A stretch of DNA of 64,000 nt, taken from positions 1 to 64,000 of the forward strand of contig NIVC01003040.1 of NCBI GenBank assembly GCA_002269645.1, given 5' to 3'. Positions 1 to 61,479 of this stretch are shown in pieces. The DNA comes from Macrostomum lignano. Its lineage: Eukaryota. The translations under genes and the position numbers were made by a program. The notes below the pieces were generated by a model. That model worked only from the letters and a program-made list of their open reading frames with translations. It did no database searches and was not told the origin of the DNA. The first letter of the stretch is position 1, and every line of letters starts with the position of its first letter.

Positions 1-3000
1 CGTCGGAGTCTTTGTCCAAATGTCGGGAATGCGTCGCCATCCGAGTCCTCAAGATGGTCGGGGATCCCATCTCCGTCGGAGTCGCGTTCCAGAGTAATCT
101 AGCAAAGAATAAAGCAGGACAACCATTTCAGCTATGGCACTACACATGAAATCTCATTGAGAAACCCCAGTGACAACCGCTAGGGCAGGCAAAATGGGGC
201 GTTCTTTTCCAGACGGTGCCCAATGCAGCTATGAAAGCAACTCCCAATGTCTGTGCTCAGCAGTAAACGTTCCGAAAGTCAGGGCTCTGCGCACAGTATC
301 AACACTCTTGCATATCCTCGCTCAAGAGTCAATGGAATGAGCATAGTTGCTTTAGCGCTGGTAGTGGAATGATGTTACTGATGGAGTGCCCTCAGCCATT
401 TAACAGTAGAAAGACCAGGCTATTTTTCCCCATGGGGAAAGACCACGGGGTGTATTACAAATACACACGACCCATTTCACGATAGCTCGCAAACCGAATT
501 TCCGATTTTCGTAAAAGTCCAACATATGGATCAAAATTTTTCGCCATTTCCGACGAACCAACTTTCAAAGTCATCCGACGTCAGCATCGTCGAGATATTC
601 AACGATTCTTGTCGAAGACACTGGTGGCAAGGACAACCAACACTACACTGTATAAACCCTTATGATGAATCCATATTGGCTCAATAATCTGAGTCCATCT
701 GTTGTAGAAGCCTTTGTTCTCAGCATCCCAGGCACCAGGGTCCCCTTCATCACCGTCTGGAGCATCGGCGGCGACCGTCGAGACCTTCAACAAAAGCACC
801 CGATCGGCATCTCAGAGACAGCAGCTGCGTTCCCAAAAACTGAAATGGAAGAATCCTCTTCTGCAGGCAGCATTCAGTCAGTAGACACAATCGGTGAATG
901 AAATGGACGACGGCGACCCTCTAGGCTGACATGTAGACATACAGGCGACCTTCTGGACCTTCAACGGAGTGCCACCACGCGGCCCCGACAAGCCGGCACC
1001 CCCAACATCGTGATTTTTCTTTCAAGGCACCAAACCAGGCATGTCTGCGTATTATACAATGATCCTGCACCATGTTCAGCATTCAGCTCTGTCTGGACGA
1101 CCTTCGGGACCTTCCGAGTGCACCTTGCGGCCCCGACGAGCTGACACCGCCAACATCTTGATTTTTCTATCAAGACACCAAACCAGGCATTTCCGCGTAT
1201 CATACAATGCTTTTGCACCATGTTAAATTCGAAACTGCGAACATCGTCAGCGGACTGCCGCAACGGACAAGCTCTACGGCATCCGACGCCTGTGGGACAC
1301 CTTTGTCAGTCAGCTGCGCCATCCTGTCCTTTCCGGCCGTACCTCTGCTTCGACGAAACTCTGGTTGTCTACTGGGGTGTGGACTGTGACTTCACGGTCT
1401 TTCTAAAGGAGAAGCCCGGTCTTCTTCTTCCATTCGGGCGCGCTCGGGCCAGGGCCCATGGCACCGGGCGTCAGATCGCGCCCGCCTTCCCGAGGAAGTT
1501 CAACACCGCGGTGCAGTTCTCGAAAACTGCCGCGGGATCCGGGCTTGGCCCCAACGGTCGCAATGGTGCCAAGCTGTTCCTGCTGACATCGACTGGAAAT
1601 CCAGAGATTCAGGATGACATGGACATCCGCTATGTGTTCAATACGGAAATCTGCACTGGCAAAGGGCACTGCTGTCCACTACTTTTGCATCACAGGAATC
1701 CGATGCTCGGCTGGCCAAGGGCTCAGAGGTGTGGAGTGGTAGGCAAGTTGTTTGCGATCATGGCTGATCCATTCAGAGGACACTGGTACAGCATCACATG
1801 TGACAGATTCTTCTCGAGTCCAGCGCTGGCCAATCACTTTTACCGGGAAAAGGGATTCACGTTTCTTGAACAGTGATGCGCACTCGTGGTGGCCTGCAAG
1901 CCGATCTCAAGAATTCAACTCAAAACATGGCTCCACACACGAGCGAATTCCGGTTTTCTGAGAAGCTCACGTGTGTGTCCTACTGCCTGTTCAGATCCTT
2001 CTGCTCTGAATTTGCTGTAATATCATTTTTGACATACTGTAATATCATTTTTGACATACTGTAATATCATTTTTGACATACTGTAATATCATTTTTGACA
2101 TACTGTAATATCATTTTTGACATACTGTAATATCATTTTTGACATACTGTAATATCATTTTTGACATACTGTAATATCATTTTTGACATACTGTAATATC
2201 ATTTTTGACATACTGTAATATCATTTTTGACATACTGTAATATCATTTTTGACATACTGTAATATCATTTTTGACATACTGTAATATCATTTTTGACATA
2301 CTGTAATATCATTTTTGACATACTGTAATATCATTTTTGACATACTGTAATATCATTTTTGACATGCTGTAATATCATTTTTGACATACTGTAATATTAT
2401 TTTTGACATACTGTAAAATCATTTTTGACATACTGTAATATCATTTTTGACATACTGTAATATCATTTTTGACATACTGTAATATCATTTTTGACATACT
2501 GTAATATCATTTTTGACATACTGTAATATAATTTTTAACAAATTAAATATTTTTTTTCAGTCGCTAGTTAAATCTGTAACTCTCCAATTTAACATGGTAC
2601 AAATGCATTGTAGAATATGCAGACATGCCTGGTTGGAGCCTTAATAGAAAAATCACGATTTTGGTGGTGCCAGCTCGTCGGGGCCGCGTGGTGGCACTCC
2701 GTTGAGGGTCCCGAAGGTCGCCTGTATGTCTACAGGTCAGCCTAGAGGGTCGCCATCGTCCATTTCATTCACCGATTGTGTCTACTGACTGAATGCTGCA
2801 TGCAGAAGAGGATTATTCCATTTCAGTTTTGGGAACGCAGCCGCCTCTGAGACGCCGATCGGGTGCTTTTGTTGAAGGTCCCGACGGTCGCCGCCGTTGC
2901 TCCAGACGGAGATGAAGGGGACCCTGGGGCCCGGGACGCTAAGAACAAAGGCCTCACGACCGATATGCATAGTTTGTTGAGCCGACGTGGTTTCATGATG

Positions 3001-6000
3001 AGATTGTGTGAGCAGAAAAATTTTGCCAATGTTGGTGGTTTTTGCCACCAGACACCCCGAGGAGAATCGCTGAATATCTCGACGATGCCAATTTTTCGTG
3101 ATTCTCAAAGTTGCTTCATCAAATAGAGCGGACAGACAGACAAAGGAAAAATGTGTGCATTTGAAATACACCCCATGGTCTTTCTACTGTTTACCAAATC
3201 TACTGTTGCCAGCTATGATTGGTTGGTGTAGTTTTGAGTAAGAATATAAGAGATGAAACTGCCTGTTTGGGCGAGGGATTGTGAGTGCTCTACTCCCAGT
3301 GTTTGTTTTCATGCTGCAACAGCTCATACGAACGAAGGTTTCGATTGGATTGCGACTGGCTCAGAAAATTGATTTGTGCAAAAAGTTTTCCATAACTCTA
3401 AAAATGATTTGCTAGTTGTGTTGCGCTTGAGGAATGAACAAAGTAAATATTGAGCTCCACTTACTAGGAATGCCGTCCCCATCGTCATCCTCTAGATAGT
3501 CTGGAACTCCGTCGCCATCGCTGTCGCCCTCCAGGTGGTCTGCCCGAGCAGGTCAGTCGAAATAATTCGGAACATATTTTTATCCCCACCAAGATCAGTG
3601 AAGAAGGGCGAACAAGAAAGGAAAGGTCACTGTATTGAGAGACAGAAAAGCTCTAGCAACTACAAGGTAAGACTCTTGCAGTGCCCTCCTGGTAGAGGAA
3701 ATGCGGCATGAAATACCAGCATGAAAGCTCGCGGACAAAGTGTTAGAAAACAAAAAAATACGAGTATATTACGAAAATTTGCTAAGAACTATTGGCAGAG
3801 CTGTAAAAGAACGAACGAGGATCTAATAGGATGTCTAAAGGTAATCTAAACATACGTAGCAAAAAACAGCAAAATCAACTTCAAGACTTCTCGAAGGTTC
3901 TGATCTCACATACCCGGAATTCCATCGCCGTCTTCGTCCTCCAAGTAGTCAGGAATGCCGTCGCCATCACTGTCGCCTTCAAGGTGGTCGGGGATGCCGT
4001 CGCCGTCTGAATCAGGGGTTGCTGGAGCCGGGGCAGACTTCTTGGAGGCTTTTGCTGGCGGCGGCTTCTTGGCCCCTGCCTTACCGCTAACTTTGACTGC
4101 TTCAGCCTCCTTCATCAGCTTCTTCTTCTGTTTTTGAGCCTCCCGAATGGCTTTATCGTCGGCGGCTTCGACACCAAACCAGCCTCCGCCACCACTGGGG
4201 CCACTACTTCCACTGCGAGGTTCCCTAACGGCACCGACGCTGTCACCCTGAGCTTGCTGACTGCGCATTCGGGTTACGGTGTCCTGGATCTGCTTGAAGT
4301 CCGACCGACAGTCTGGGATGCCATCGCCGTTACGGTCCGGATCGTCTGCGTCTGGAATTCCATCGTTATCGTCGTCGTCATCTACGTGGTTCATGACGCC
4401 GTCCATGTCGCTGTCTTGAGTGCGGTCGATGTAGCCGTCGTTGTCAATGTCCACATCGACGTCGTCCGGCACGCCGTCGCAGTCGTGATCATCAGCAAGC
4501 GACTTGAGCTTGCGCGTCTGCGGCTTCTTCTCGGCTTTTTCCGGCTTTGAGACCGTCTTGGTCGGGGCCGGCTTTTTCGGTGGAGTTGCAGCTTTTTTCG
4601 CCTCCTTTGCAGCCGGCTTCTTGGCTTGTGGTGGCGAAGCGGCTTTAGCTGGTTTTGCAGTCTTCTTTGCTGGAGTTGGCGGCGCGGGTGCTTTCTTAGT
4701 GGCCGCCGGCTTCTTTGCCGCAAGTGTCGGCTGAGTTGGCTTTTTTGCCGCTGGAGCATCGGGCTTCTTTGGGACAGCCTTAGCTGGCTTGGGTGGTGGC
4801 GGCGGCGGTGGCGGCGGCGGAGTTGCCTTCTTGGCTGCAGGCTTTGCCGCCGGAGGAGCTTTTTTAGTTGCGGCTGGTGCAGCCGGCTTCTTCTTATCTT
4901 CCTTCTTAGTATCCGGTTTAGAATTTTTCTTCTTATCCTTCTTGTCAGGTGATTTGCTCTTCACCTCCGCCTTCTTGTTGGCCGCGAGTTTCTTCTTGCT
5001 ATCAGGTTTGCTTGGTGCTTCAGCCTGTTCTGCCACTTCTTCCGGCTTCTTTTTCTGCAGCTTGATGCGCGTGTGCATCATGGGATCCTTGATGCGGTTG
5101 CCCAAGCCTTTCTTGTGAATCTCGTGCGCGGACACCTGCGACTTCTTGGCCTCGATGAGTTCCTGTTCTTCCTCGGCCTCCTTGCGCGAGATCAGCACCT
5201 TTTGGACCTTGCCTTTGCCGGAGCGGACCACCTTGTAGAGAATCGATTCGTCGCGACGGCAGTCGGGCACTCCGTCGCCGTTGGAGTCCGGATCGCGCTC
5301 GTCCGGGATGCCTGCGAGGTTTGTAGATGTGTAATCTCGATCAATAAAAGCCGACCAGCCAAACCCAACCCGATGCAACCTTTCTACCATTTTTGCAGAT
5401 AAGTTTGCATGGGGCCTTGTTGTTTGTTTTCGAGTGGGTTGGTCGTGGCGACTTCTCTTCCACGGTTCTCGAAGTTCTTTCGTGTCGCATAACTTGCTGC
5501 ATTCTATCGTTTCCTAACCTACAACCCAAGCAACCCAACTTCTCCCACCGTCGTTGTCATCGTCCTCGTCAACGTGGTTGAGCTGCCCGTCCCAGTCGGA
5601 GTCCTGAGTCCTGTCCAGCTTGCCGTCGTTGTCGTTGTCATCGTCCTCCTCGTCCGGGATGCCGTCGCAGTCGCGGTCACCCGGGTCGCCAAGGTTGGCC
5701 TCGTTGTTGGCGTTTGCTCGGGCCTCGTCAGCTGCGGGCAAGACGAAACAAAAATGCTGCTTTCAGGAACTGTATGAGAGTACAAACTCTGGTTGTGAGT
5801 GCATGGCAGTTACTAATTGTTAGCACACAGTTCAGTATCTTCCTCGGTTTTTAATTTCCAAGTGGCTCCGATGTTTGAGCAATAGCTATAATTCAGAAAC
5901 TTAAAATAATTCACGGAGTGAGCCTTCAATATTGCACCAAAGTCACAAAAAATTGTTAGAATTAGATGAGATGCTTTTGTTAGGCAGATGAGTGGCCGGC

Positions 6001-25178: not shown

Positions 25179-25334
25179 GTTTGGCACTTCTTAGCCATGA
25201 AGGCTGGGCAGTGCAGGGCTTTCCCGGTGCTTTTATACCTTAATTAGCTCACGTGAGCAGAGTGCGGGCTGGGGTGCGCTGCTAGTCGTGCTCTGCCTCC
25301 CAGGTTGGATACAGACAGCTGACCCGCCCACGTA

Positions 25335-28914: not shown

Positions 28915-30213
28915 GACTCCGTGACAGCCTCGCCAAGTCCCATCTGTTGAGGGCTGTTTTTACACGGGCTCAGGACAGCCTCGCCAAGTCCCATCTGTTG
29001 AGGGCTATTTTTACACGGGCTCCGTGACAGCCTCGCCAAGTCCCATCTGTTGAGGGCTGTTTTTACACGGGCTCCGTGACAGCCTCGCCAAGTCCCATCT
29101 GTTGAGGGCTGTTTTTACACGGGCTCCGTGACAGCCTCGCCAAGTCCCATCTGTTGAGGGCTATTTTTACACGGGCTCCGTGACAGCCTCGCCAAGTCCC
29201 ATCTGTTGAGGGCTGTTTTTACACGGGCTCCGTGACAGCCTCGCCAAGTCCCATCTGTTGAGGGCTATTTTTACACGGGCTCCGTGACAGCCTCGCCAAG
29301 TCCCATCTGTTGAGGGCTGTTTTTACACGGGCTCCGTGACAGCCTCGCCAAGTCCCATCTGTTGAGGGCTGTTTTTACACGGGCTCAGGACAGCCTCGCC
29401 AAGTCCCATCTGTTGAGGGCTGTTTTTACACGGGCTCCGTGACAGCCTCGCCAAGTCCCATCTGTTGAGGGCTGTTTTTACACGGGCTCCGTGACAGCCT
29501 CGCCAAGTCCCATCTGTTGAGGGCTGTTTTTACACGGGCTCCGTGACAGCCTCGCCAAGTCCCATCTGTTGAGGGCTGTTTTTACACGGGCTCCGTGACA
29601 GCCTCGCCAAGTCCCATCTGTTGAGGGCTATTTTTACACGGGCTCCGTGACAGCCTCGCCAAGTCCCATCTGTTGAGGGCTGTTTTTACACGGGCTCCGT
29701 GACAGCCTCGCCAAGTCCCATCTGTTGAGGGCTATTTTTACACGGGCTCCGTGACAGCCTCGCCAAGTCCCATCTGTTGAGGGCTGTTTTTACACGGGCT
29801 CCGTGACAGCCTCGCCAAGTCCCATCTGTTGAGGGCTGTTTTTACACGGGCTCCGTGACAGCCTCGCCAAGTCCCATCTGTTGAGGGCTGTTTTTACACG
29901 GGCTCAGGACAGCCTCGCCAAGTCCCATCTGTTGAGGGCTGTTTTTACACGGGCTCAGGACAGCCTCGCCAAGTCCCATCTGTTGAGGGCTATTTTTACA
30001 CGGGCTCAGGACAGCCTCGCCAAGTCCCATCTGTTGAGGGCTGTTTTTACACGGGCTCAGGACAGCCTCGCCAAGTCCCATCTGTTGAGGGCTGTTTTTA
30101 CACGGGCTCAGGACAGCCTCGCCAAGTCCCATCTGTTGAGGGCTGTTTTTACACGGGCTCAGGACAGCCTCGCCAAGTCCCATCTGTTGAGGGCTATTTT
30201 TACACGGGCTCAG
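28915..30213. repeat. Highly homogeneous 51-bp tandem array, about 25 copies
   Basis: GACAGCC recurs at 28923 and 28974 (period 51). Translates as a 17-aa pseudo-repeat. Confidence 0.95.
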
Positions 30214-31220: not shown

Positions 31221-31619
31221 CTCTTCTAAGACTTTGAAGTAAAAGTGTGGGCAGACTCACTGGCAGATGAAAAGCAAGAGTAAAAAACAGCAACGCTCAC
31301 GGAAAGCCAATAAAATACGTTTAAAAATGACAAAAAAACAGATTAAAAAATATTGCTAGTAAGTGCTCAGTCAGTGGTTCTGGCGCGCGACTGATGCAGG
31401 ACAAAATAAACTTCAAATAAAAATTGTCAACTCAGACCAGAGCCCCCACACAGTTCAACTGAATTATAGGGGAAACAGTGCGCAATTAAATTATCAGTGC
31501 ATGCGGGCGCCAACTCTCATTTCCATTATTGCTCCTGATAAGTGTTCTTTAATCGGACAGCCTTTCAGTATTTCAGTAACTACGAGTAGCTCTTCATTCC
31601 CAGTCCTTTTATTTGTGCC

Positions 31620-32190
31620 TAACCCTTACCCTAAACCTAGCCCTATCTCTAACCCTAGCCCCACCCCAACCCTAGCCCCCACCCCAACCCTAGCCCCACC
31701 CCAACCCTAGCCCCCAACCCAACCCTAGCCCCCACCCCAACCCTAGCCCCACCCCAACCCTAGCCCCCACCCCAACCCTAGCCCCCACCCCAACCCTAGC
31801 CCCCATCCCAACCCTAGCCCCACCCCAACCCTAGCCCCATCCCAACCCTAGCCCCACTCCAACCCTAGCCCCATCCCAACCTTAGCCCCACCCCAACCCT
31901 AGCCCCACCCCAACCCTAGCCCCATCCCAACCTTAGCCCCACCCCAACCCTAGCCCCACTCCAACCCTAGCTCTACCCCAACCCTAGCCCCACCCCAACC
32001 CTAGCCCCACCCCAACCCTAGCCCCACCCCAACCCTAGCCCCACCCCAATCCTAGCCCCAGCCTTACCCTAGCCCCACCCCAACCCTAGCCCCACCCCAA
32101 CCCTAGCCCCACCCCAACCCTAGCCCCACCCCAACCCTAGCCCCACCCCAACCCTAGTTCCAGCCCAACCCTAGCTCTAACCTTAGCCCT
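31620..32190. repeat. 18/19-bp C-rich minisatellite (CCCCACCCCAACCCTAGC)n with telomere-like AACCCT cores
   Basis: Direct reading. Starts with degenerate CCTAAC/CCTAAA/CCTAGC hexamers. Confidence 0.9.
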
Positions 32191-32300
32191 AGTAGACACA
32201 ACGTCAAAATTATATTTCGCTCAAGCCCCTCAGCGACTCCGCAGGGCAGGCAGGCAGGCAGGCAGGCAGAAGTTCACAGCTACCAGCCCCAGCCCATCAA

Positions 32301-36176: not shown

Positions 36177-37980
36177 ATGGCCTCCTCAATGAAAATGGAC
36201 GGCGGAAAGGAGATCGTGGATTTTTTCTGCGAGGTTGGCACATATTTGCGATCGCTGCTGCAAGCTCGAGGAGAGGCATGTATAATTTCTGTTTTTTTAC
36301 TCTTGTGTTATTTGTTCACAGCTATGGATCGTAATTTTAAATGTACAAAACTGACACCTTTCAGAGGACCTGGTGCAACAGACTTTTGAGAGACGTTCCT
36401 GTAAGTTATGATTAATCCGTGTGCAAGAGGGTTTTGAGTACTTTTGTTAGATGCTGTTGTGTACGATTGATTAGACGTTCTTAGATCGTGTGAACCACCG
36501 TACTTCAGGTTGAGTTGCAGCGAGACATGGAAAATCTGGCGAAACCCTGCATGGAGTTTCTCTTAAGTCCAAGCAAGTTGCTTGAAAGACTTAGCAAAGA
36601 TGGCGAGGCACTGAAAACTCTACAGAGCTGCCTCAAGTGAGTGTGAACGATGAGTTGCTGATATTGATGCCATCTTCGAAAAAAGTTGAATAGTGAAATG
36701 TTTCTTTATAAATTGCGTAAATTGCTACAGATCTTTTGGCCGCCTGTATGAGAACAGCAATGCTTTTAAAACGTCAAAAGTGTCTCTGTGCATCGTGGAG
36801 CTGGTGCTGTGGATGCTGAAGTCGTCTGATGGCAGCCTGACGGACTGGCAAAACGAGCTTCAGGCGAATCTGGATGAATTTTTGCGAAATGCGTCAGGTT
36901 TACTGCACTTCTACAGAGAGGATAGCCTGTCCGATAAAGAGAGAAAACTTCTGGATGATTTCAAATCTTTTTCGGACAAGGACGCCAAAAGTCTGTATAA
37001 CAACCCTTTGTTTTTGAATGCTTACGCCAAAGGGGAAATGCCGAAGAAGTTGAGAATATTCCGGGCAACTTTTAGCAAGATAATTAGGGAACGGCTGTCC
37101 CAAGGTACCGGCAAGTTCCGAGTACTTTCGCTGGGTTGCGGCCCCGGCAGCGACTTGCTGGCTGTGCTGGAGCTGCTGGCTGAGAACCACAGCCAGAGAC
37201 AAGTGCAGTGCGTTGGCGTTGACCAGCAGTGGTGGCCAAGAGGCGGCTTCTTTGTGCAGCGACCGAACACCCTGCCAAGTGCAGCCGTTTCGTTTGTTCA
37301 AGCGGATATCGAAAGTTTTGTGACATCAACTCGGGAGAAGTTCAACCTGGTATTGCTGAGCTTCGTTGGAGTCGGTCAAATGCCAGAGTCAATTCTGAAG
37401 GAGGGTCTTCAAAGTCTACTGACGGACGATGGGACAGCCTGTGTCGTAGACAAGTATACAGACGACGTTATTCGGCTGACAGAACTGCCTGCTTTTCAAC
37501 CCACTGCTGTGTGGCTGTCGAACGACCAAGCTAACGAGAAATACCCGATTATGATTGCACTGTGCATGCGGAAGGATCAGGAAATGGTAAGTTTACAAAA
37601 ATATATAGAAGATGAGAGACTTTCGAGTCGTGTAGATCAGCTAAATCGAATGTAACCAATCAGAGACAGTCGAGTTTGCCAAACTGTATTTTCAGGTCAT
37701 GCGGGATGTTCGAGTCTTTTATGTCCGCGAAGAATTTGTTGACTTGACAGTCAATGACAGCAACATGTCATTGTGGATGCAACTGGAAGCATTTGTGTCT
37801 TTTGCTCAGAGCCTCAAAAGCCAAGAGCAAAGCTTCGAGCAGAAGCTGCAAACAAAATATCCCAGCTACATCTGGAGCAAAAACGAGGCAACTGATGAAG
37901 GCTGCCTGTATCTTGACTTCCGCTTCGTACAGAAAGACATCAGAATCTTGCTTCTCGGAAAGGTAATCCAAGCAAGGTAA
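36177..37980 (+). CDS. Class I SAM-dependent methyltransferase-fold protein, substrate unknown (3' end uncertain)
   Basis: Exons 36177-36233, 36365-36400, 36509-36636, 36731-37586, 37696 to about 37961/37980 join in phase. Motif I RVLSLGCGPGSD, beta2 CVGVD, FVQADI, FNLVLLSFV. Confidence 0.75.
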
Positions 37981-48919: not shown

Positions 48920-49975
48920 GTATGTCACACTATTAGTCACACCATCAGTCACACTATTAGTCACACTATTAGTTACACCATCAGTCACACTATTAGTGAC
49001 ACTATTAGTCACACTATTAGTCACACTATTAGTCACACTATTAGTAGCATTATTGGTCACACTATTAGTCACACTATTAGTCACATTATTAGTCACACTA
49101 TTAGTCACACTATTAGTTACACCATCAGTCACACTATTAGTCACACTATTAGTTACACCATCAGTCACACTATTAGTGACACTATTAGTCACACTATTAG
49201 TCACACTATTAGTCACACTATTAGTAGCATTATTGGTCACACTATTAGTCACACTATTAGTCACATTATTGGTCACACTATTAGTCACATTATTAGTCAC
49301 ACTATTAGTCACACTATTAGTCACACTATTAGTCACACTATATTGGTCACACTATCAGTCACTATTAGCCACACTTTTATTGACACCATCAGTCACACTA
49401 TTAGTCACATTATTAGTCACACTATCAGTCACACTATTAGTCACATTATTAGTCACACCATCAGTCACACTATTAGTAACATTATTGGTCACACTTTTAG
49501 TCAAATTATTAGTCACACTATCAGTCACACTATTAGTAACATTATTGGTCACACTATTAGTCACATTATTAGTCACACTATCAGTCACACTATTAGTAAC
49601 ATTATTGGTCACACTATTAGTCACATTATTAGTCACACTATATTAGTCCCACTGTTAGTCACACCATCAGTCACGCGATTAGTCAAACAATTAGTCACAC
49701 TATTAGTCACACTATATTAGTCACACTATTAGTCACACTATTAGTCACACTATTAGTCACACTATATTGGTCACACTATCAGTCACACTATTAGCCACAC
49801 TGTTATTGACACCATCAGTCACACGATTAGTCAAACAATTAGTCACACAGTTAGTCACACTATATTAGTCACACTATTAGTCACACTATTAGTAACATTA
49901 TTGGTCACACTATATTAGTCACACTATTAGCCACACTGTTAGTGACACTATTAGACACATTATTAGTCACAAAAT
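48920..49975. repeat. 12-bp minisatellite (AGTCACACTATT)n
   Basis: Direct reading. Confidence 0.95.
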
Positions 49976-50479
49976 TACCTGTAACCTACGACTGCAATGA
50001 CCTTCAATGTCTCAGGCCGACTGTCTCTGGATTCCAGCGCCCATTTTTCTCGTTGAAACTTCTGGCGCTCCTCATCGACCCAAAAGTCCCTCACAGAGTC
50101 TCCCACAGTGCTTCACTTTGTGCCCCCCCCCACTCTCAACCCGCTTATCCCCCGCTGCGCCGAGGCGAGGTTGGACGATTCGATCTGCCGGGCGCACCTG
50201 AGCCGGGCTCCCACAGACCTGAGCCTCGCAGTTATCGCCCGCGCTGAATTCCGCCTTCGATTCACTGAGCCAGCCTGCTGTGACTGCCGCTGCGATTCTC
50301 TCGGCAGCTCTCACCTGCCCCCCCCCCTCCCTGCACACCCGAGCTCGGCCGGATCGAACTCCCCTCGATCGAACCCTGGCAGCTCATGCAGGCAAAGTGG
50401 TCGCTTCTGAAAGTTCGATTCGGCATTGATAGTTGAGATGCTAGCGCGATGCACTTTAAAGAGATTAGGAAGAAAATTT

Positions 50480-51595
50480 CGAAGAAGTCCAGTTTCCAGT
50501 GATTTCGAAGAGGTCCAGTTTCTAGTGATTTCGAAGAGGTCCAGTTCCTAACGATTTTGAAGAGGTCCAGTTTTTAATGCTTTCGAAGGGGTCCAATTTT
50601 CAATGATTTTGAAGAGGTCCAGTTTCCAGTGATTTTGTAGAGGTCCAGTTTCCAATGATTTTTAAGAGGTCCAGTTTCCAAGGATTTTGAAGAGGTCCAG
50701 TTTCCAGTGATTTCGAAGAGGTCCAGTTTCTAGTGATTTCGAAGAGGTCCAGTTCCTAACGATTTTGAAGAGGTCCAGTTTTTAATGCTTTCGAAGGGGT
50801 CCAATTTTCAATGATTTTGAAGAGGTCCAGTTTCCAGTGATTTTGTAGAGGTCCAGTTTCCAATGATTTTTAAGAGGTCCAGTTTCCAAGGATTTTGAAG
50901 AGGTCCAGTTTCCAGTGATTTTGAAGAGGTCCAGTTTCCAGTGATTTTGAAGAGGTCCAGTTTCCAGTGATTTCGAAGAGGTCCAGTGTCTAGTGATTTC
51001 GAAGAGGTCCAGTTTCCAGTGATTTTTAAGGGTTCCAGTTTCCAGTGATTTCGAAGAGGTCCAGTTTCTAGTGCTTTCGAAGCGTTCCAATTTTCAATGA
51101 TTTCGAAGAGGTCCAGTTTCCAGTGATTTTTAAGGGTTCCAGTTTCCAGTGATTTCGAAGAGGTCCAGTTTCTAGTGCTTTCGAAGCGTTCCAATTTTCA
51201 ATGATTTCGAAGAGGTCCAGTTTCCAGTGATTTCGAAGAGTTCCAGTTTCTAGTGATTTCGAAGAGGTCCAGTTTCTAGTGATTTCGAAGAGGTCCAGTT
51301 TCTAGTGATTTCGAAGAGGTCCAGTTTCCAGTGATTTCGAAGAGGTCCAGTTTCCAGTGATTTTTAAGAGGTCCAGTTCCCAGTGATTTTTAAGAGGTCC
51401 AGTTTCCAATAATTTCGAAGAGGTCCAGTTTCCAGTGATTTCGAAGAGGTCCAGTTTCTAGTGCTTTCGAAGGGGTCCAATTTTCAATGATTTTGAAGAG
51501 TTCCAGTTTCCAGTGATTTTGAAGAGGTCCAGTTCCCATTGATATTGAAGAGGCTCATTTTCCAGGGATTTCGAAGAGGTCCAGTTTCCAGTGAG
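50480..51595. repeat. 26-bp minisatellite (TTCGAAGAGGTCCAGTTTCCAGTGAT)n
   Basis: Direct reading. Confidence 0.95.
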
Positions 51596-52111
51596 TTCGA
51601 TACGGCTTATTTATTAATATTTTAAAGTCCCAATGTTGACGCGGAGGTGGCATGGTCTTATTCGATCTTGTTATTCGATTGCTAATTTTCAACAACAGCT
51701 CATCCGGGCATTTCCTCTGCTCTCTTGCTTGACAAGTCGGCCTGTTTTTTTCACCTGAACAAACAAGCTGTTTGTTTTTTTACTCGTTTTACAAGAATCG
51801 GCAGTCAGTTGAAATCCCATTGATTGCCGGACGTTCGCTTCCTATTTTGGCGGCCGCCGCCGCTGCTGCAAGCTCCCCAGAGAGACGGACAGCCGGGCTG
51901 GGGAGATTAGGGCTTCGGCTGAGATCCGGGCAAACCTTTAATTATTGATTTTGCCCAGCAGGACTCGGACAGAGAGAGAGAGAGATTGATGAAGGCGACT
52001 CTCTGGCTTGACAGTACAAAATTTAAATGAACGGCACTGAAGCCGGCATTTTTGTACCAGTTGCTTGCGAAAGAGAAACTTTCCAACTGGGTACCAAACT
52101 GTAGGAGAGCG

Positions 52112-53340
52112 CTTTGAGAACACTGGGATGCCAGCTTTGAGAACACTGGGACACCAGCTTTGAGAACACTGGGATGCCAGCTTTGAGAACACTGGGACAC
52201 CAGCTTTGAGAACACTGGGATAACAGCTTTGAGAACACTGGGACACCAGCTTTGAGAACACTGGGACACCAGCTTTGAGAACACTGGGATGCCAGCTTTG
52301 AGAACACTGGGACACCAGCTTTGAGAACACTGGGACACCAGCTTTGAGAACACTGGGATGCCAGCTTTGAGAACACTGGAATGCCAGCTTTGAGAACACT
52401 GGGACACCAGCTTTGAGAACACTGGGATGCCAGCTTTGAGAACACTGGGACACCAGCTTTGAGAACACTGGGATAACAGCTTTGAGAACACTGGGATGCC
52501 AGCTTTGAGAACACTGGGACACCAGCTTTGAGAACACTGGGATAACAGCTTTGAGAACACTGGGACACCAGCTTTGAGAACACTGGGACACCAGCTTTGA
52601 GAACACTGGGATGCCAGCTTTGAGAACACTGGGACACCAGCTTTGAGAACACTGGGACACCAGCTTTGAGAACACTGGGATGCCAGCTTTGAGAACACTG
52701 GAATGCCAGCTTTGAGAACACTGGGACACCAGCTTTGAGAACACTGGGGGACGCCAGCTTTGAGAACACTGGGATGCCAGCTTTGAGAATACTGGGATGC
52801 CAGCTTTGAGAACACTGGGATGCCAGCTTTGAGAACACTGGGACACCAGCTTTGAGAACACTGGGGGACGCCAGCTTTGAGAACACTGGGATGCCAGCTT
52901 TGAGAACACTTGGATGCCAGCTTTGAGAACACTGGGGAACGCCAGCTTTGAGAACACCGGGATGCCAGCTTTGAGAACACTGGGACACCAGCTTTGAGAA
53001 CACTGGGATGCCAGCTTTGAGAACACTGGGGGACGCCAGCTTTGAGAACACTGGGACACCAACTTTGAGAATACTGGGATGCCTGCTTTGAGAACACTGG
53101 GATGCCAGCTTTGAGAACACTGGGACACCAGCTTTGAGAATACTGGGACACCAGATTTGAGAACACTGGGACATCAGCTTTGAGAATACTGGGATTCCAG
53201 TTTTGAGAACACTGGGATGCCAGCTTTGAGAACACTGGGGGACGCCAGCTTTGAGAACACTGGAACACCTGGGACACCAGCTTTGAGAACACTGGGATGC
53301 CAGATTTGAGAACACTGAGACGCCAGCTTTGAGAACACAC
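52112..53340. repeat. 23-bp minisatellite (GCTTTGAGAACACTGGGATGCCA)n
   Basis: Direct reading. Confidence 0.95.
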
Positions 53341-55435: not shown

Positions 55436-56856
55436 GGATCGAGTTTGTTAAGACAAAGGGGGAAGGCCCGTTTCACTGAACCCTGAGCATTCGGGTTGAT
55501 GCGTACGCTGGCTCATTTTCACATAGGATCTGAGTAGAAGTGAGTACGGCCGCTAACAGAATCGAACTTGGTAAACTCGACTAGTGCCTCCCCTAAGCCT
55601 TCTGGACTCAAAATTTAATGGTGATTTTAATATGCTTTGAGCCCCCCTCTCGATAAAAGCTGCTGGGCTGCAGCGGTCCAGCTAGCAGTAATTAAAAAGC
55701 CGTGGCGGAACGGAGCTGCGAGTTCCTTGGGCGACGAAAACGATTTATTTTTCATTAAAATATCAGCGGCGACGAATGCGCAGTTAATGCAGCGCCGCGG
55801 GTTTCTGGCGCGAGTGGGGTGGTCGGTTTAAAAATGCAGCTTTCCGCTTTTGTCTCTCCGCCGGAATTTCTGCTTCCATTTGCCATTTTCCTCCATTTTT
55901 TCGGGAGCCGGGTTGAGGAAGAATAGCAGTTTTTTGGGGGATTTTTGTAGCTCGCGCTACAATGGGATCGGTGAGCTGTGGCGGCCACCTCATCACCTCT
56001 GCATCCGCGATGTCTGATCTGTGAGCAGGAATTGAGCGATATATCCGATATATTTTATTTCAAGCAATCAAAGCTCATTGCTACGGTTGAATGCACTGGG
56101 AGCGTGACTATTTTATCGATTTTTTAACAGTAGAAAGACCAGGCTATTTTTCCCCATGGGGAATTGACCACGGGGGTGTATTACAAATACACACGACCGC
56201 TTTCACGATAGCTCGCAAACCGAATTACCGATCTTCGTAAAAGTCCACCATATGGATCAAACTTTTTCGCCCTTTCCGATGAACTAACTTTCAAAGTCAT
56301 CCGACGTCAGCATCGTCGAGATATTCAACGATTCTTGTCGAAGACACTGGTGGCAAGGACAACCAACACTACACTGTATAAACCTTTATGGTAAATCCAT
56401 ATTGGCTCAATAATCTGGGTCCATCTGTCGTAGAAGCCTTTGTTCTCAGCATCCTAGGCACCAGGGTCCCCTTCATCTCCGTCTGGAGCAGCGGCGGCGA
56501 CCGTCGGGACCTTCAACAAAAGCACCCGATCGGCATCTCAGAGGCGGATGCGTTCCCAAAACTGAAATGGAAGAATCCTCTTCTGCATGCAGCATTCAGT
56601 CAGTAGACACAATCGGTGAATGAAATGGACGATGGCGACCCTCTAGGCTGACCTGTAGACATACAGGCGACCTTCGGGACCTTCAACGGAGTGCCACCTT
56701 GCGGCCCTGATGAGCTGGCACCACCAACATCGTGATTTTTCTATCAAGGCACCAAACCAGGCATGTCTGCATATTATACAATGATCCTGCACCATGTTAA
56801 ATTGGAGAGTTACAGATTTATCTGGCGACTGAAAAATAGAAAATATATTTAATTTG

Positions 56857-57322
56857 TCAAAAATGATATTACAGCATGTCAAAAATGATATTACAGCATG
56901 TCAAAAATGACATTACAGCATGTAAAAATGATATTACAGCATGTCAAAAATGATATTACAGCATGTCAAAAATGATATTACAGCATGTCAAAAATGATAT
57001 TACAGCATGTCAAAAATGATATTACAGCATGTCAAAAATGACATTACAGCATGTCAAAAATGATATTACAGCATGTCAAAAATGACATTACAGCATGTCA
57101 AAAATGATATTACAGTATATCAAAAATGATATTACAGCATGTCAAAAATGATATTACATCATGTCAAAAATGATATTACAGCATGTCAAAAATGATATTA
57201 CATCATGTCAAAAATGATATTACAGCATGTCAAAAATGATATTACATCATGTCAAAAATGATATTACAGCATGTCAAAAATGATATTACATCATGTCAAA
57301 AATGATATTACAGCATGTCAAA
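56857..57322. repeat. 22-bp tandem array (GTCAAAAATGATATTACAGCAT), about 21 copies, at the inner end of the left arm
   Basis: Period 22 (56943, 56965). An inverted about 3-copy counterpart lies at about 60130-60195. Confidence 0.95.
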
Positions 57323-57397
57323 ATTGATTCGCCTGGGTAGAGGCAACTTTGCAACGGTGAAGTCTTCTACTTAAATCAATTATAGCAAATCACTGAG

Positions 57398-57739
57398 TCA
57401 TGTTCTTCGAAGCTTCCGAATGACCAGGCGAATGAACTGTTCAGCCGTGATGTTCTCGTGGACCGCAGGTGGGGCTGAATCCACAACCTCTCCACCGGTA
57501 ACACTTCGCAGGTAGCGCTTGATTTCTTCTGGGTAGTTAAACTGCATGACGGCGAACTGTTCCTGCTTACCAAATCGCTTCAGATATCGGGCCCAGATTG
57601 TGTACGCATCATGTCTGCCAGCCTTGCTGTTGCAATTTCTATAGCGCTCGCACCAGGAAATGAAGCCCTTGGCGTCGTTGTCTGTGGCTCCATTTTCTAT
57701 GAGATATCTGTGCAACAGTTGCACCTCAGTGACTGCCAT
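57398..57739 (-). CDS. Transposon passenger ORF, 113 aa, function unknown (weak KolX/P2X7-ballast-like motif)
   Basis: ATG at 57739 in good context (acaATGg), TGA at 57400-57398. Uninterrupted and non-repetitive, with globular-looking composition. A TATA box lies upstream. Confidence 0.65.
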   Translation of the reverse strand: MAVTEVQLLHRYLIENGATDNDAKGFISWCERYRNCNSKAGRHDAYTIWARYLKRFGKQEQFAVMQFNYPEEIKRYLRSVTGGEVVDSAPPAVHENITAEQFIRLVIRKLRRT

Positions 57740-57934
57740 TGTGTAAGGACGCAACCGGTTTGTGAATGGGATTTTAGCAAGATTCCGGAAAGACTGAAGA
57801 ACTGAAGATGTGCTGGTTTTTGTAACAGTGCAATCTCTCGCCTCGCTTTGCCTCCCTTTCTTCCAGGCGGTTATTCTTTCTTGATTCCCGAGCCTGAGGG
57901 CTTCGCGATGGCTGCTCTGAAAGTTCTGTGACTA

Positions 57935-57944
57935 CTTATATATA
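57935..57944 (-). promoter_or_regulatory. TATA box (TATATATAAG) for the passenger ORF
   Basis: Minus-strand TATATAAG about 25 bp upstream of an Inr-like TCAGAG (57920) and about 200 bp upstream of the ATG. Confidence 0.5.
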
Positions 57945-58453
57945 GTGCCTACAAAGGTATGTACTGATTTCACTGTGGGACGCAGGCGCATGCATTTTAT
58001 GCCGGGATTATATGTATGTTCCACCGCTGGTAACGATGAATAATCTATTGAAGCTTGGAAATGTCGTCCCTCCTGTTGAGTTTACTGTATCTGGGGCGGG
58101 GGGGGGGGCAACTGTTACTAGGGGGTTTAGCCACAGTCGGTCGGTCCCTGGAGGGGGTGGGGGGGTGACTCGCGTTCAGACTAAGAATATCTAACTCACG
58201 ACTCTCAATCCTGATTAGCTAGATTACCCCTGCAGGTATACCATCACTTCGTCTCAACTTCCATTCTGACGCACGTGTCCGCTGGGCCCATTAATTTAAT
58301 TAGTTTAATCTTTCTGATACTATTCAGCTTAGCTTCGCCAAATCTCTCGCACGTGGCAGAAACTGTTGCTGCTTGGGTAAACGTCTTATAAATTCTGCTT
58401 CTCGTCCAAACTGGCACACATCTATCCGGTAGAACAAATTCTCCTGCTTCTGA

Positions 58454-60128
58454 ATGGCAGAGACTCTTGCTGACAGCGATTCGGATGAAGAGTTTTCTCC
58501 AGATAAGAGTGGTCCAGATGAAAGAAAAATTCTGTTCGACATTTCTCATGACCCAATCAACTCCCCCCACATCCAAGACGATGGGCTAGTGACAGTTTTT
58601 CTCGGTTGACAGACGAACTCAATCTACGCATTAATTGGAAGGAGTGCGCTGAAACGGAGAGCGGCACACTGATGGGCTTCTTCGATGACTCCATGCTGGA
58701 TTTGATCACAGCTGCAACGAATGAGAGCATCAGCTCAACATGTGGAGACTCAGCTGAGCTGGCAAGCAGAATGGAGATTGAGGGGCTAATCGGTGCTCTA
58801 CTGTACAGCGGAGCCAACGATCTGCGCAATGTCGCCCTGATAGACTTGTGGAGCACTGATGTGAATTCTGGCTACCATCCACTGCTGCAGTGTGCGTTCA
58901 GCCGAAATCGATTTCTACTACTTTGGTGCAACCTGTGCTTCGAAACTGCCGAACATAGTCAGCGGACTGTCACAACGGACAAGCTCTACGGCATCCGACG
59001 CCTGTGGGACACCTTTGTCAGTCAGCTGCGCCATCCTGTCCTTCCCGGGCCGTACCTCTGCGTCGACGAAGCTCTGGTTGTCTACTGGGGTGTGGACTGT
59101 GACTTCACGGTCTTTCTGAAGGAGAAGCCCGGTCGCAATGGTGCCAAGCTGTTCCTGCTGACATCGGCTGGGAATCCAGAGATTCAGGATGACATGGACA
59201 TCCGCTATGAGTTCAATGCGGAAATCTGCACTGGCAAAGGAACACTGCTGTCCACTACTTTTGCATCATAGGAATCCGATGCTCGGCTAGCCAAGGGCTC
59301 AGAGGTGTGGAGTGGTGAGCAAGTTGTTTGCCGCTTGGCTGATCCATTCAAAGGACACTGGTACAGCATCACATGTGACAGATTCTTCTCGAGTCCTGCG
59401 CTGGCCAATCACTTGTACCGAGAAATGAGATTCACGTTTCTTGGAACAGTGATGCGCACTCGTGGTGGCCTGCCAGCCGATCTCAAGAATTCAACTCAAA
59501 CCATGGCTCCACACACGAGCGAATTCCGGTTTTCTGAGGAGCTCACGTGTGTGTCCTACTGCCCTAAGGCGGGCCGAAACGTGATGTTGCTGTCCACCAT
59601 GCACCACGACAGACAACTGCTTCCCAATGGCAAGCCTGTAGCAATAGGCACGTACTACAATTCTACCAAGAGTGGCACGGACACCTGCAACAGGATGTTC
59701 CGCACATCCGACTGCAAGCGAAAGTCCGACTCATGCGAGAAGGCAATCTTCTCCGGCGGCATACTCAACATAGCAGCTGTGAATGCCGCTGCCATCTGGA
59801 GACTGGCGCACCCGGAGCTCTGCGCCTCGCCGAACTATCGCAACGAGTTCCAGCGCAAGGCAGCTGCGCGACATCTGCAACCTCTGATCGAGAAGCGCTC
59901 GCAATCGGCCGCTCTTCTTCAGAATCTGTCCAATCATCACCGGCTGATGATCCAGCTCGCAGGTTGTCAAATCAACGACGAGCAAATGAAGGAACAGGCA
60001 AGCGTGCCTTGAGTGCGACAACAAGGAAGTGTTGCATATGTGATGAAGGAATTTGCCGAAGACACACTGCGATGAAAATTGACTCCGCTTTTGTGTCTAT
60101 GTGTCGGTGTTCAGATCCTTTGCACTGA
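58454..60128 (+). pseudogene. piggyBac (PGBD/DDE_Tnp_1_7-type) transposase, disrupted
   Basis: Acidic N-terminus MAETLADSDSDEEF (ATG at 58454). Catalytic motifs [16 protein letters not shown] and KSGTD, plus [15 protein letters not shown] and VMLLSTMH. C-terminal Cys-rich remnant CLEC..KCCIC...IC RRH. Lesions: frameshift near 58500-58560, nonsense TAG at 59269-59271 (CAG in the other copy), frameshift(s) near 59990-60030. Confidence 0.92.
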
Positions 60129-61479
60129 ATTTGCTGTAATGTCATTTTAGACATGCTGTAATATCATTTTTGACATGCTGTAATATCATTTTTTACAAAT
60201 TAAATATTTTATTTTTTCAGTCGCCAAATAAATCTGTAACTCTCCAATTTAACATGGTGCAAAAGCATTGTATAATATGCAGACATGCCTAGTTTGGAGC
60301 CTTGATAGAAAAATCACGATTTTGGGGGTGCCAGCTCGTCGGGGCCGCGTGGGTGGCACTCCGTTAAGGTCCAGAAGGTCGCCTGTATGTCTACAGGTCA
60401 ACCTAGAGGGTCGCCATCGTCCATTTCATTCACCGATTGTGTCTACTGACTGAATGCTGCATGCAGAAGAGGATTATTCCATTTCAGTTTTGGGAACGCA
60501 GCCGCCTCTGAGACGCCGATCGGGTGCTTTTGTTGAAGGTCCCGACGGTCGCCGCCGTTGCTCCAGACGGAGATGAAGGGGACCCTGGGGCCTGGGACGC
60601 TGAGAACAAAGGCCTCACGACCGATATGCATAGTTTGTTGAGCCGACGTGGTTTCATGATGAGATTTTGTGAGCAGAAAAATTTTGCCAATGTTGGTGGT
60701 TTTTGTCACCAGACACCTCGAGGAGAATCGTTGAATATCTCGACGATGCCGATAATTCGTGATTCTCGAAGTTGCTTCATCGAATAGAGCGGAAAATTTT
60801 AGCCCGTGTTCTGGATTTTCATGGCAATCGGTTAAATATTCTTGGAGATCCAGACAAAGGAAAATGTGTGTATTTGAAATACACCCCCATGGTCTTTCTA
60901 CTGTTAATGCGACTGGGTCCGCGAGTTACCGATATCCCTAGTGCCTTTTGGAGTGACTTGAGAGTGACTGCGGGAGAGACAGCGAGAGTGAGCTCATTGG
61001 CGACTCACATCTTTCTGCCAGCTAAGCAGGCGGGAGGGCCTTCGGGCGTGGTCCCGATCTCCTTCGATCGGCTCAAGTCGCAGGGAGCAGAAGAGGATGA
61101 ATGGAGGGCAAAAGCCGTGAAATTCGAGTTGCAGCCCTGAATGGGATGGAGAATTGGGAGATCAGCAGAGACGATAAGGCTCGGGAACGGGATGCGCGAG
61201 ACAAATAGGAGAGAAGAATTCAGAGAGAGAGATCAGGAGGCTTTAATCCGATTTAATCTGATTAAGGACCTGTTTACCGGTCAGGTGTGACACAAGGATC
61301 ACCTTAGAATAACGAATTCAAAAGCAGCATTGGGAAACTACAAGTGCAGAACTGAAATTGCATGAGCCTAACATTAATAAAGTAACAGAATCTGTCGTGA
61401 GACTTTCCGCTTATAATTTGAGTATATTTTTACTGGAAATGTGAGTGTGACGTTGCTCAGAATACATGCAGCATAGGAA

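What the first reader, a model, noticed from the sequence alone, without database searches (positions are those of the whole stretch)
56128..60903. Foldback-like about 0.7-kb inverted arms whose identity is highest at the inner end
Seen: the left arm (56128 to about 56860) and right arm (about 60195-60903) are inverted copies. The inner part is nearly identical (8 mismatches in a 174-bp stretch counted by hand; 56433-56606 vs 60443-60616), while the outer about 250 bp are much more diverged except for the TIR and one palindrome. The copy at 404-3189 has the same arms. Established: piggyBac ends are normally short TIRs plus short subterminal repeats, and long arms are typical of Foldback/Galileo-type elements. 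Inference: inner homogenisation by arm-to-arm gene conversion or a recent duplication, with potential for a large cruciform or dsRNA from read-through transcripts.
Basis: partly seen in the sequence, partly recalled or inferred. Interest (0 to 1): 0.7.

Follow-up and report, generated by a model that had tools for sequence, protein, structure and literature searches.

The report
piggyBac-like transposon with long inverted arms
This is a decayed piggyBac-type jumping gene whose two ends carry unusually long (about 0.8 kb) inverted copies of each other, and the nearly identical inner part was already present in the ancestor of both copies in the window, so it does not come from ongoing copying between the arms.

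Summary
Window 56128-60903 is a TTAA-flanked piggyBac-like element (PF13843 transposase, now a pseudogene) with inverted arms of about 790 bp. Arm-to-arm identity jumps at about 56436: K2P distance 0.55 in the outer ~300 bp and 0.066 in the inner zone.

Three corrections:
- The outer arms are still homologous, about 62% identical.
- Identity peaks in a core (56461-56680), not at the innermost end.
- A 22-bp satellite sits, inverted, at the inner edge of both arms.

The second copy (404-3189) is an independent insertion with the same arms and the same step. A four-arm comparison gives 11 inner-zone left/right differences shared by both copies. No site shows the two arms of one copy sharing a copy-specific change. 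The step is therefore ancestral and is not maintained by arm-to-arm conversion in these copies.

The likeliest cause is one inward extension or re-homogenisation of the arms in the master element, as described for Galileo. The extreme ends are canonical piggyBac: a 14-bp TIR, spacers of 0 and 29 bp, and a 22-bp subterminal repeat. piggyBac elements with TIRs of 200-528 bp are already published. No further copies could be retrieved. Modest interest.

The parts
56124..56127 (.). Left TTAA target-site duplication of copy 2
   Evidence: TTAACAGTAGAAAGACCA matched at 56124-56141
56128..56141 (+). Left 14-bp terminal inverted repeat CAGTAGAAAGACCA
   Evidence: Found only at the four element ends in the window; 0.06 matches expected by chance
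56142..56170 (+). 29-bp spacer present only at the left end (28 bp in copy 1); contains CCCCATGGGG
   Evidence: Four-arm alignment: absent from both right ends. It gives the asymmetric TIR-to-subterminal-repeat spacing typical of piggyBac
56173..56194 (+). Left 22-bp subterminal inverted repeat GGGGTGTATTACAAATACACAC, itself palindromic.
   Evidence: Four matches, only at the four ends; 0 expected by chance
56196..56432 (+). Left outer, side-specific zone, about 62% identical to the right outer zone
   Evidence: K2P 0.55 left vs right in both copies. 54 side-specific sites shared by both copies. Homology is significant outside the conserved boxes (z=13.1 and 5.4 vs shuffles)
56310..56335 (+). 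26-bp box GCATCGTCGAGATATTCAACGATTCT, identical in three of the four arms (R1 has one mismatch); right-arm copy at 60724-60749
   Evidence: alignment; it lies inside a zone that is otherwise 62% identical. Candidate protein-binding site (inference)
56433..56854 (+). Left inner arm, near-identical to 60198-60616; core 56461-56680 is 96-100% identical
   Evidence: It carries two copies of CGACCKTCGGGACCTTCAAC, 170 bp apart (56498, 56668)
56855..57328 (+). 22-bp satellite TGTCAAAAATGATATTACAGCA, 21.6 units, at the inner edge of the left arm
   Evidence: TRF; inverted with respect to 60132-60197 (pairs I3-I25)
57329..58453 (.). Unique internal spacer. A minus-strand ORF (57398-57754, open upstream to about 57930) has no firm family assignment
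   Evidence: 27 of 28 residues match the C-terminus of a Macrostomum lignano UniRef protein
58454..60131 (+). piggyBac transposase pseudogene. ATG at 58454 is in a different frame from the core. Core frame 58552-60012 has an in-frame TAG at 59269-59271. The cysteine-rich C-terminus is in another frame up to 60128
   Evidence: PF13843 at E=1.2e-25 and 9e-16. 42% identity to P0001 residues 63-506 in one frame. Copy 1 has CAG at the TAG position
60132..60197 (-). Same 22-bp satellite, 3 units, inverted, at the inner edge of the right arm
60198..60616 (-). Right inner arm, near-identical inverted copy of 56433-56854
60617..60862 (-). Right outer, side-specific zone
60866..60887 (-). Right 22-bp subterminal inverted repeat, directly next to the TIR (no long spacer)
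60890..60903 (-). Right 14-bp TIR
60904..60907 (.). Right TTAA target-site duplication of copy 2
404..3189 (+). Copy 1, an internally deleted, independent insertion flanked by TTAA and TTTA. Left arm 404-1076. Extra degenerate partial arm unit 1098-1232. Transposase fragments 1228-1421 and 1555-1987. Foreign 134-bp insert 1422-1554. 22-bp satellite 2015-2540 (23.9 units) on the right side. Right arm about 2541-3189
   Evidence: Its flanks are unrelated to those of copy 2. It is 94-95% identical to copy 2 throughout

Best explanation
The feature is a real, family-level trait of a piggyBac-like DNA transposon. Both copies in the window are decayed: one is a near full-length pseudogene and the other an internal-deletion derivative.

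Each end has three layers:
1. A canonical asymmetric piggyBac terminus. It has a 14-bp TIR, then 0 bp (right) or 28-29 bp (left) of spacer, then a 22-bp subterminal inverted repeat.
2. About 250 bp of old, side-specific sequence. It is still homologous between the ends but only about 62% identical, and it holds one conserved 26-bp box. This layer is probably the functional left-end and right-end domain that the transposase recognises (inferred).
3. About 420 bp of near-identical inverted sequence that ends in a 22-bp satellite.

The jump in identity arose once, in the master element, shortly before the two copies' lineages split. Either sequence next to one arm was recruited into the other arm (inward TIR extension, as described for Galileo), or an older full-length inverted duplication was re-homogenised over its inner part. 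After that event the arms simply decayed independently. No arm-to-arm conversion is detectable in either copy. The satellite arrays then expanded or contracted independently by slippage.

Shown: the anatomy, the step, its presence in both copies, and the absence of copy-specific shared changes. Inferred: the nature of the single event, the binding role of the outer zone and the boxes, and any role in silencing.
For: Element identity:
- TTAA/TTAA flanks and the TIR occur only at the four ends.
- PF13843 transposase, 42% identical to a full-length 580-aa piggyBac-family protein. Aspartates sit in the CVDE, TCDRF and GTDT contexts aligned to those of that protein.
- The subterminal repeat occurs only at the four ends, with a left-only 28-29-bp spacer.

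The step:
- Change point at 56436, 2*dlnL = 109. K2P left vs right is 0.55 outer and 0.066/0.087 inner.

Ancestral rather than ongoing:
- Inner-zone site patterns are S=11, C=0, X=2 and private=25. Outer-zone patterns are S=54, C=0.
- Inner left-right distance in each copy equals the shared ancestral 3% plus that copy's private changes.
- The copies are independent insertions. They are 3-6% diverged everywhere, so decay has been uniform and neutral since insertion.

Outer arms are homologous beyond the conserved boxes, so the arms have at least two age strata: local-alignment z = 13.1 and 5.4.

Satellite dynamics: right array 3 units in copy 2 against 23.9 nearly identical units in copy 1.

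Precedent:
- Galileo TIRs grow by recruiting internal sequence and by tandem-repeat expansion inside the TIR (PMC3573991).
- Long-TIR piggyBac elements exist.
Against: - Only two copies were available, so 'family level' rests on their common ancestor alone.
- There is no outgroup. Some sites scored as private to one arm could be ancestral left/right differences erased by conversion in the other copy, so a low level of short-tract conversion cannot be excluded.
- Two X-pattern sites (56676, 56723) are unexplained. They may be homoplasy or old polymorphism.
- Extension and re-homogenisation cannot be told apart with these data.
- The hint of three strata is weak, because the counts are small: core S 3 of 267, innermost S 6 of 120.
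- The two distant relatives inspected (L001, L002) show no long arms. The trait may therefore be confined to a narrow lineage.
Confidence: 0.6

Rival explanations
1. Ongoing concerted evolution: the two arms of each inserted copy keep converting each other over the inner zone, for example through intrastrand pairing or cruciform repair.
For: The inner arms are long and similar enough to pair. The identity profile looks patchy, with a 96-100% core flanked by 84-94% sequence, as a conversion tract would. Sites scored as 'private' could hide converted ancestral differences.
Against: There are zero copy-specific shared sites, against 25 private changes in the inner zone. All 11 ancestral left/right differences are retained in both copies. 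Inner left-right distance in each copy (0.066, 0.087) is not lower than the between-copy distance (0.031-0.054).
Confidence: 0.1
2. Selective constraint: the inner arms stay alike because nearly every base is functional in the active element. Possible functions are repeated transposase-binding motifs, an inward promoter, or a hairpin RNA. Under this view the outer zones drifted or were selected to differ.
For: A 20-bp motif, CGACCKTCGGGACCTTCAAC, occurs twice per arm, 170 bp apart, with 0 expected by chance. Subterminal repeats bind transposase in other superfamilies (discussion in PMC3573991).
Against: Constraint on about 420 contiguous non-coding bases on both arms is implausible. The arm ORFs (72 and 88 aa) have no family match, and 3-bp and 1-bp insertions in the left arm of copy 1 disrupt that reading frame. 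In piggyBac the essential cis sequences lie at the outer ends (established knowledge, not tested here). The motif accounts for only 40 of about 420 bp.
Confidence: 0.12
3. Artefact or composite: the arms come from a foldback assembly error, or the unit is two separate elements in inverted orientation around an unrelated transposase gene.
For: Long-read assemblies can contain palindromic chimeras (general knowledge).
Against: Two independent loci, about 5% diverged, carry the same architecture. The TIR and the subterminal repeat occur only at the four outer ends, and no internal termini or TTAA-bounded sub-elements were found.
Confidence: 0.03

Closest known systems
piggyBac-like elements with long TIRs: PiggyBac-2_Cvir of Crassostrea virginica (528 bp) and bee elements with TIRs of 200-201 bp (Bombus) and 489-493 bp (Exoneura robusta) (PMC10813416, PMC10140906)
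   Same: piggyBac-family transposase with inverted termini of hundreds of bp. The bee elements also keep the TTAA duplication. The family is otherwise dominated by TIRs shorter than 25 bp.
   Different: PiggyBac-2_Cvir has an atypical TATG duplication, whereas this element has TTAA. The high-identity part here is subterminal: it starts about 300 bp in, behind a diverged outer zone, and ends in a 22-bp satellite. The papers do not describe age strata or satellites in the arms.
Trichoplusia ni piggyBac (type element)
   Same: TTAA target. Short TIR (13 bp there, 14 bp here). Subterminal inverted repeat (19 bp there, 22 bp here) at unequal distances from the two TIRs: 3 and 31 bp there (from memory), 0 and 28-29 bp here. 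DDE_Tnp_1_7 transposase.
   Different: The long spacer here is at the end upstream of the transposase gene. There is about 0.5 kb of extra near-identical inverted sequence plus a satellite. The TIR starts CAG rather than CCC.
Galileo (P superfamily) and Foldback-type elements of Drosophila
   Same: Long, internally repetitive inverted arms, with tandem repeats inside or at the inner part of the arms whose number differs between the two arms. Arm growth by recruiting internal sequence (PMC3573991) is the best analogue for how the inner zone arose.
   Different: The transposase superfamily differs (piggyBac, not P/THAP). The target duplication is TTAA, not 7-9 bp. The arms make up about a third of the element, not most of it. 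This is convergence in architecture, not membership.

Membership tests
piggyBac superfamily | TTAA target-site duplication | tested here: met
   TTAA on both sides of copy 2. Copy 1 has TTAA and TTTA, one substitution
piggyBac superfamily | DDE_Tnp_1_7 (PF13843) transposase | tested here: met
   E=1.2e-25 and 9e-16 on the two halves, covering profile positions 5-163 and 191-348 of 349. 42% identity to P0001 over 474 columns
piggyBac superfamily | Catalytic DDD triad | tested here: inconclusive
   Aspartates lie in LCVDEAL, ITCDRFF and KSGTDT, aligned to the same contexts in P0001. They were not mapped onto an experimentally characterised transposase here
piggyBac superfamily | Short TIR plus subterminal inverted repeat with asymmetric spacing | tested here: met
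   14-bp TIR, 22-bp subterminal repeat, spacer 28-29 bp on the left and 0 bp on the right, in both copies
piggyBac superfamily | C-terminal cysteine-rich domain | tested here: inconclusive
   Only a weak match in a shifted frame (RKCCICDEGICRRH, E=0.042)
piggyBac superfamily (autonomous member) | Intact transposase reading frame | tested here: not met
   In-frame TAG at 59269. The N-terminal and C-terminal parts are in other frames. Copy 1 is internally deleted
Foldback / Galileo-type elements | Long inverted arms with internal tandem repeats | tested here: met
   Arms of about 790 bp, with a 22-bp satellite at the inner edge of both arms and unequal unit numbers
Foldback / Galileo-type elements | P-superfamily (Galileo) or Foldback-type transposase | tested here: not met
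   The only transposase match is PF13843, piggyBac
Foldback / Galileo-type elements | 7-bp (Galileo) or 9-bp (Foldback) target-site duplication | tested here: not met
   The duplication is the 4-bp TTAA. TSD lengths for Galileo and Foldback are from memory

The most novel reading that the evidence does not exclude
A piggyBac lineage has converged on a Foldback/Galileo-like architecture. In the active element, the inner arms are repeatedly re-homogenised by hairpin-templated repair during transposition. They then freeze once a copy is inactive. The resulting 0.5-kb perfect hairpin feeds the host small-RNA pathway, so the arms act as a built-in self-limiting device. The two fossil copies studied here cannot exclude this, because they report only on what happened after insertion.
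Probability: 0.1. Interest if true: 0.55.

Novelty: new member of a known kind. Interest (0 to 1): 0.3.

Why it matters
It adds a well-dissected example to the few piggyBac elements with long inverted termini. It also shows that 'long TIR' can hide layers of very different age: a canonical asymmetric piggyBac end, an old diverged duplication, and a younger near-identical extension capped by a satellite.

The four-arm site-pattern test separates an inherited identity step from ongoing conversion. That test can be reused for any long-TIR element.

Practically, such arms can seed inversions and hairpin RNAs and can confuse assemblers and TE annotators in a repeat-rich genome. The arm-borne 22-bp satellite, 3 units in one copy and 24 in the other, is a small case of a transposon carrying an expandable tandem array.

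Tried and rejected
- More copies. Exact-pattern scans of metagenome contigs and genome contigs, using a 23-mer identical in all four arms and a two-unit satellite pattern, found nothing.
- Close protein relatives. The best transposase hit is only 42% identical (P0001). Its 3.6-kb contig shows no element ends and no long inverted repeats. A more distant relative on a 131-kb contig also has no long inverted repeat around the gene. Neither belongs to this family, so neither bears on the family consensus.
- Host identification. A 320-aa methyltransferase-like ORF had no homologue at E<=1e-5 and no exact record. P0007 has no contig on record. Rfam found nothing in the window.
- Arms built from larger tandem subunits. 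Rejected: within each arm only the 22-bp motif repeats, at 170-bp spacing. The exception is a degenerate extra unit in the left arm of copy 1.
- Coding function of the arms. The 72-aa and 88-aa arm ORFs have no Pfam match.
- Internal termini or a composite of two elements. Rejected.
- Literature on endogenous piggyBac elements in Macrostomum. Nothing was found in the transgenesis paper or the TE paper.
Full report
**1. What is there**

The region 56128-60903 is bounded by TTAA on both sides. It starts and ends with the 14-bp inverted sequence CAGTAGAAAGACCA. In the 64-kb window this sequence occurs only at these two ends and at the ends of a second copy, 404-3189, with 0.06 matches expected by chance.

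Inside lies a piggyBac-family transposase gene on the + strand.
- Pfam PF13843 (DDE_Tnp_1_7) matches the two halves at E=1.2e-25 and 9e-16.
- The frame 58552-59961 aligns to residues 63-506 of a 580-aa piggyBac-family protein (P0001) at 42% identity.
- The gene is dead. It has an in-frame TAG at 59269-59271, where copy 1 has CAG.
- The ATG-containing N-terminus (58454 onward) is in another frame.
- The cysteine-rich C-terminus is seen only weakly, in a third frame.

The element is therefore a decayed, near full-length piggyBac-like element.

Copy 1 (404-3189) is an internal-deletion derivative of the same family, 94-95% identical wherever it aligns. It is flanked by TTAA and TTTA. Its flanks are unrelated to those of copy 2, so it is an independent insertion.

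**2. The observation**

The arms are real. Collinear inverted pairs are listed, and one BLAST HSP runs 56166-56920 against 60894-60132.

A two-rate change-point analysis of the left/right alignment gives:
- a step at 56436, with support interval 56423-56440;
- 41% differing columns outside and 6.6% inside;
- 2*dlnL = 109.

K2P distances between arms are 0.55 in the outer zone in both copies. In the inner zone they are 0.066 (copy 2) and 0.087 (copy 1).

- The outer zones are not unrelated. Outside the conserved islands they still align far better than shuffled sequence (z=13.1 and 5.4), at about 62% identity. The whole ~0.8 kb is therefore an old inverted duplication with a younger-looking inner part.
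- The best identity lies in a core, 56461-56680 (96-100% in windows from 56465 to 56611). The innermost 56680-56860 is 84-94% identical and has small indels.
- The arms end in a 22-bp satellite (TGTCAAAAATGATATTACAGCA), inverted at the two inner edges. Copy 2 has 21.6 units on the left and 3 on the right. Copy 1 has 23.9 nearly identical units on the right, and its left array was lost in the internal deletion.

**3. Anatomy of the ends**

In both copies the left end reads: TIR, then a 28-29-bp spacer, then GGGGTGTATTACAAATACACAC. The right end reads: TIR directly followed by GGGGTGTATTTCAAATACACAC.

A short TIR plus a roughly 20-bp subterminal inverted repeat at unequal distances from the two termini is the classical piggyBac arrangement. 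In the Trichoplusia ni element the values are 13-bp TIR, 19-bp repeat and spacers of 3 and 31 bp (from memory, not tested here).

Further in, a 26-bp box (56310-56335 / 60724-60749) is identical between the two arms of copy 2. The left arm of copy 1 also matches it exactly, and the right arm of copy 1 has one mismatch. It lies within sequence that is otherwise 62% identical.

Each inner arm carries two copies of CGACCKTCGGGACCTTCAAC, 170 bp apart, with 0 expected by chance. These are candidate protein-binding sites. That is an inference.

**4. Is the inner identity maintained by conversion?**

I aligned the four arms: L1, L2, and the reverse complements of R1 and R2. Variable sites were then classed as follows.

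| Zone | Sites compared | S: left differs from right, shared by both copies | C: the two arms of one copy share a copy-specific state | X: crossed pattern | Private to one arm |
|---|---|---|---|---|---|
| Inner (56433-56798) | 364 ungapped columns | 11 | 0 | 2 | 25 |
| Outer (56196-56432) | 183 ungapped columns | 54 | 0 | 0 | 18 |

If the arms of an inserted copy had been converting each other, two things would follow. Some of the 25 private changes would have been copied across, giving C sites. Some S sites would also have been erased in one copy only. Instead, every S site persists in both copies. The inner left-right distance of each copy equals the ancestral ~3% plus its own private changes.

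The step in identity was therefore already present in the last common ancestor of the two copies. Nothing but independent decay has happened since.

One caveat applies. Without an outgroup, a few sites scored as private could be erased S sites, so rare short tracts cannot be excluded.

**5. Most likely mechanism**

One event in the master element made the inner ~0.5 kb, satellite included, identical on both sides. It occurred shortly before the lineages of the two copies separated. The ancestral inner divergence is ~3%, against ~3-6% between the copies.

Two versions fit.
- Inward extension: sequence adjacent to one arm was recruited into the other arm.
- Re-homogenisation: the inner part of an older, longer inverted duplication was made identical again.

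The first has a documented precedent in Galileo. There, TIRs lengthen by recruiting the region just inside the TIR, and tandem repeats inside the TIR vary independently between the two arms (PMC3573991).

The outer ~300 bp would have escaped because piggyBac needs differentiated left and right ends. This is an inference from established knowledge of piggyBac end asymmetry.

The satellite arrays then changed length independently. The 24-unit array of copy 1 is 98% homogeneous, while the copy as a whole is ~5% diverged from copy 2. That array therefore probably expanded after insertion (inference).

**6. Consequences**

A transcript reading through both arms could form a long duplex. RNA cofold of the arms gives -1139 kcal/mol against about -448 for shuffled controls, and 463 of 488 inner-arm bases pair with the other arm. 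Whether this happens in vivo, or triggers small RNAs, could not be tested here.

**7. Comparison with what is known**

- Membership in the piggyBac superfamily is met on target site, transposase family and end architecture.
- Autonomy is not met.
- Foldback/Galileo membership fails on transposase family and target duplication. The resemblance is architectural only.
- Long-TIR piggyBac elements are already reported: 528 bp in Crassostrea virginica, 200-201 bp in two Bombus species, and 489-493 bp in the bee Exoneura robusta (PMC10813416 and PMC10140906). A long-armed piggyBac is rare but not new.
- I did not find the layered age structure or the arm-borne satellite described in those papers.

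**8. Limits**

Only two copies were available. No further copy was found in the collections that can be scanned by DNA. The nearest protein relatives are too distant to inform on this family.

The host is a eukaryote with a cytochrome P450 gene and many minisatellites. A single match of 27 of 28 residues to a Macrostomum lignano protein suggests a macrostomid flatworm. That is a lead, not proof.

**9. Verdict**

- The 'recent duplication' reading holds at the level of the family's ancestor.
- The 'gene conversion between arms' reading is not supported for these copies.
- The element is a new member of a known, uncommon kind.
- Interest is modest.

Noticed in passing
window 57398-57930, minus strand, inside copy 2: An antisense ORF (118 aa from its first start, open for about 177 aa) lies between the left satellite and the transposase gene. 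Over residues 78-105, 27 of 28 match the C-terminus of a Macrostomum lignano UniRef protein (A0A1I8HFR5, 'HTH_38 domain-containing'); overall the match is 57% over 67 residues. Pfam gives only a sub-threshold DUF7254 hit. It could be a second element gene, a captured fragment or a nested repeat. It is also the only clue to the host.
   Followed up: partly
window 1098-1232 (copy 1, left arm): A second, degenerate partial copy of the innermost arm segment lies next to the internal-deletion junction. It is 84-86% identical to every other arm, which is more diverged than the left and right arms are from each other. Its state at the side-specific sites is mixed. It may be an older tandem duplication of the arm or filler DNA from repair.
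   Followed up: partly
window 1422-1554 (copy 1): A 134-bp GC-rich insert interrupts the transposase fragment of copy 1 and is absent from copy 2. Its origin is unknown.
   Followed up: no
whole window, e.g. 13718-14932, 26335-27420, 28917-30211, 48924-49971, 50476-51600, 52111-53263: The window is packed with minisatellites. TRF lists 63 rows, including dozens of distinct arrays with periods of about 10-95 bp and lengths of 0.3-1.3 kb, each with a different unit. The 22-bp satellite of the transposon occurs only inside the two element copies.
   Followed up: no
window 31618-32191: An interstitial telomere-like array (CCTAAC / CCCTAA variants and a 17-bp derivative, ACCCCAACCCTAGCCCC).
   Followed up: no
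window 3906-5390 (-), 8317-8488, 9725-10345 (-), and 25-68: Several ORFs encode Asp-rich DxDxDG-type repeats (DSDGDGIPD...). By eye they resemble thrombospondin type-3 calcium-binding repeats, and they suggest a locally duplicated gene family. Pfam gave no hit at E<=0.001.
   Followed up: partly
window 23643-25187 (-): A cytochrome P450 (PF00067, E=7e-46) is read as one long ORF, apparently through an intron-like middle segment. It resembles the animal CYP2 clan by eye.
   Followed up: partly
window 36693-37655 (+): A 320-aa ORF has a weak SAM-methyltransferase signature (PF13847, below cutoff). It had no homologue at E<=1e-5 among 5.8 billion proteins. It is either lineage-specific or not a real gene.
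   Followed up: partly
window 58096-58106 and 58155-58168 (inside copy 2): Two G-runs (10 G at 58097-58106; 58155-58167 reads GGGGGTGGGGGGG) lie in the unique spacer upstream of the transposase start.
   Followed up: no
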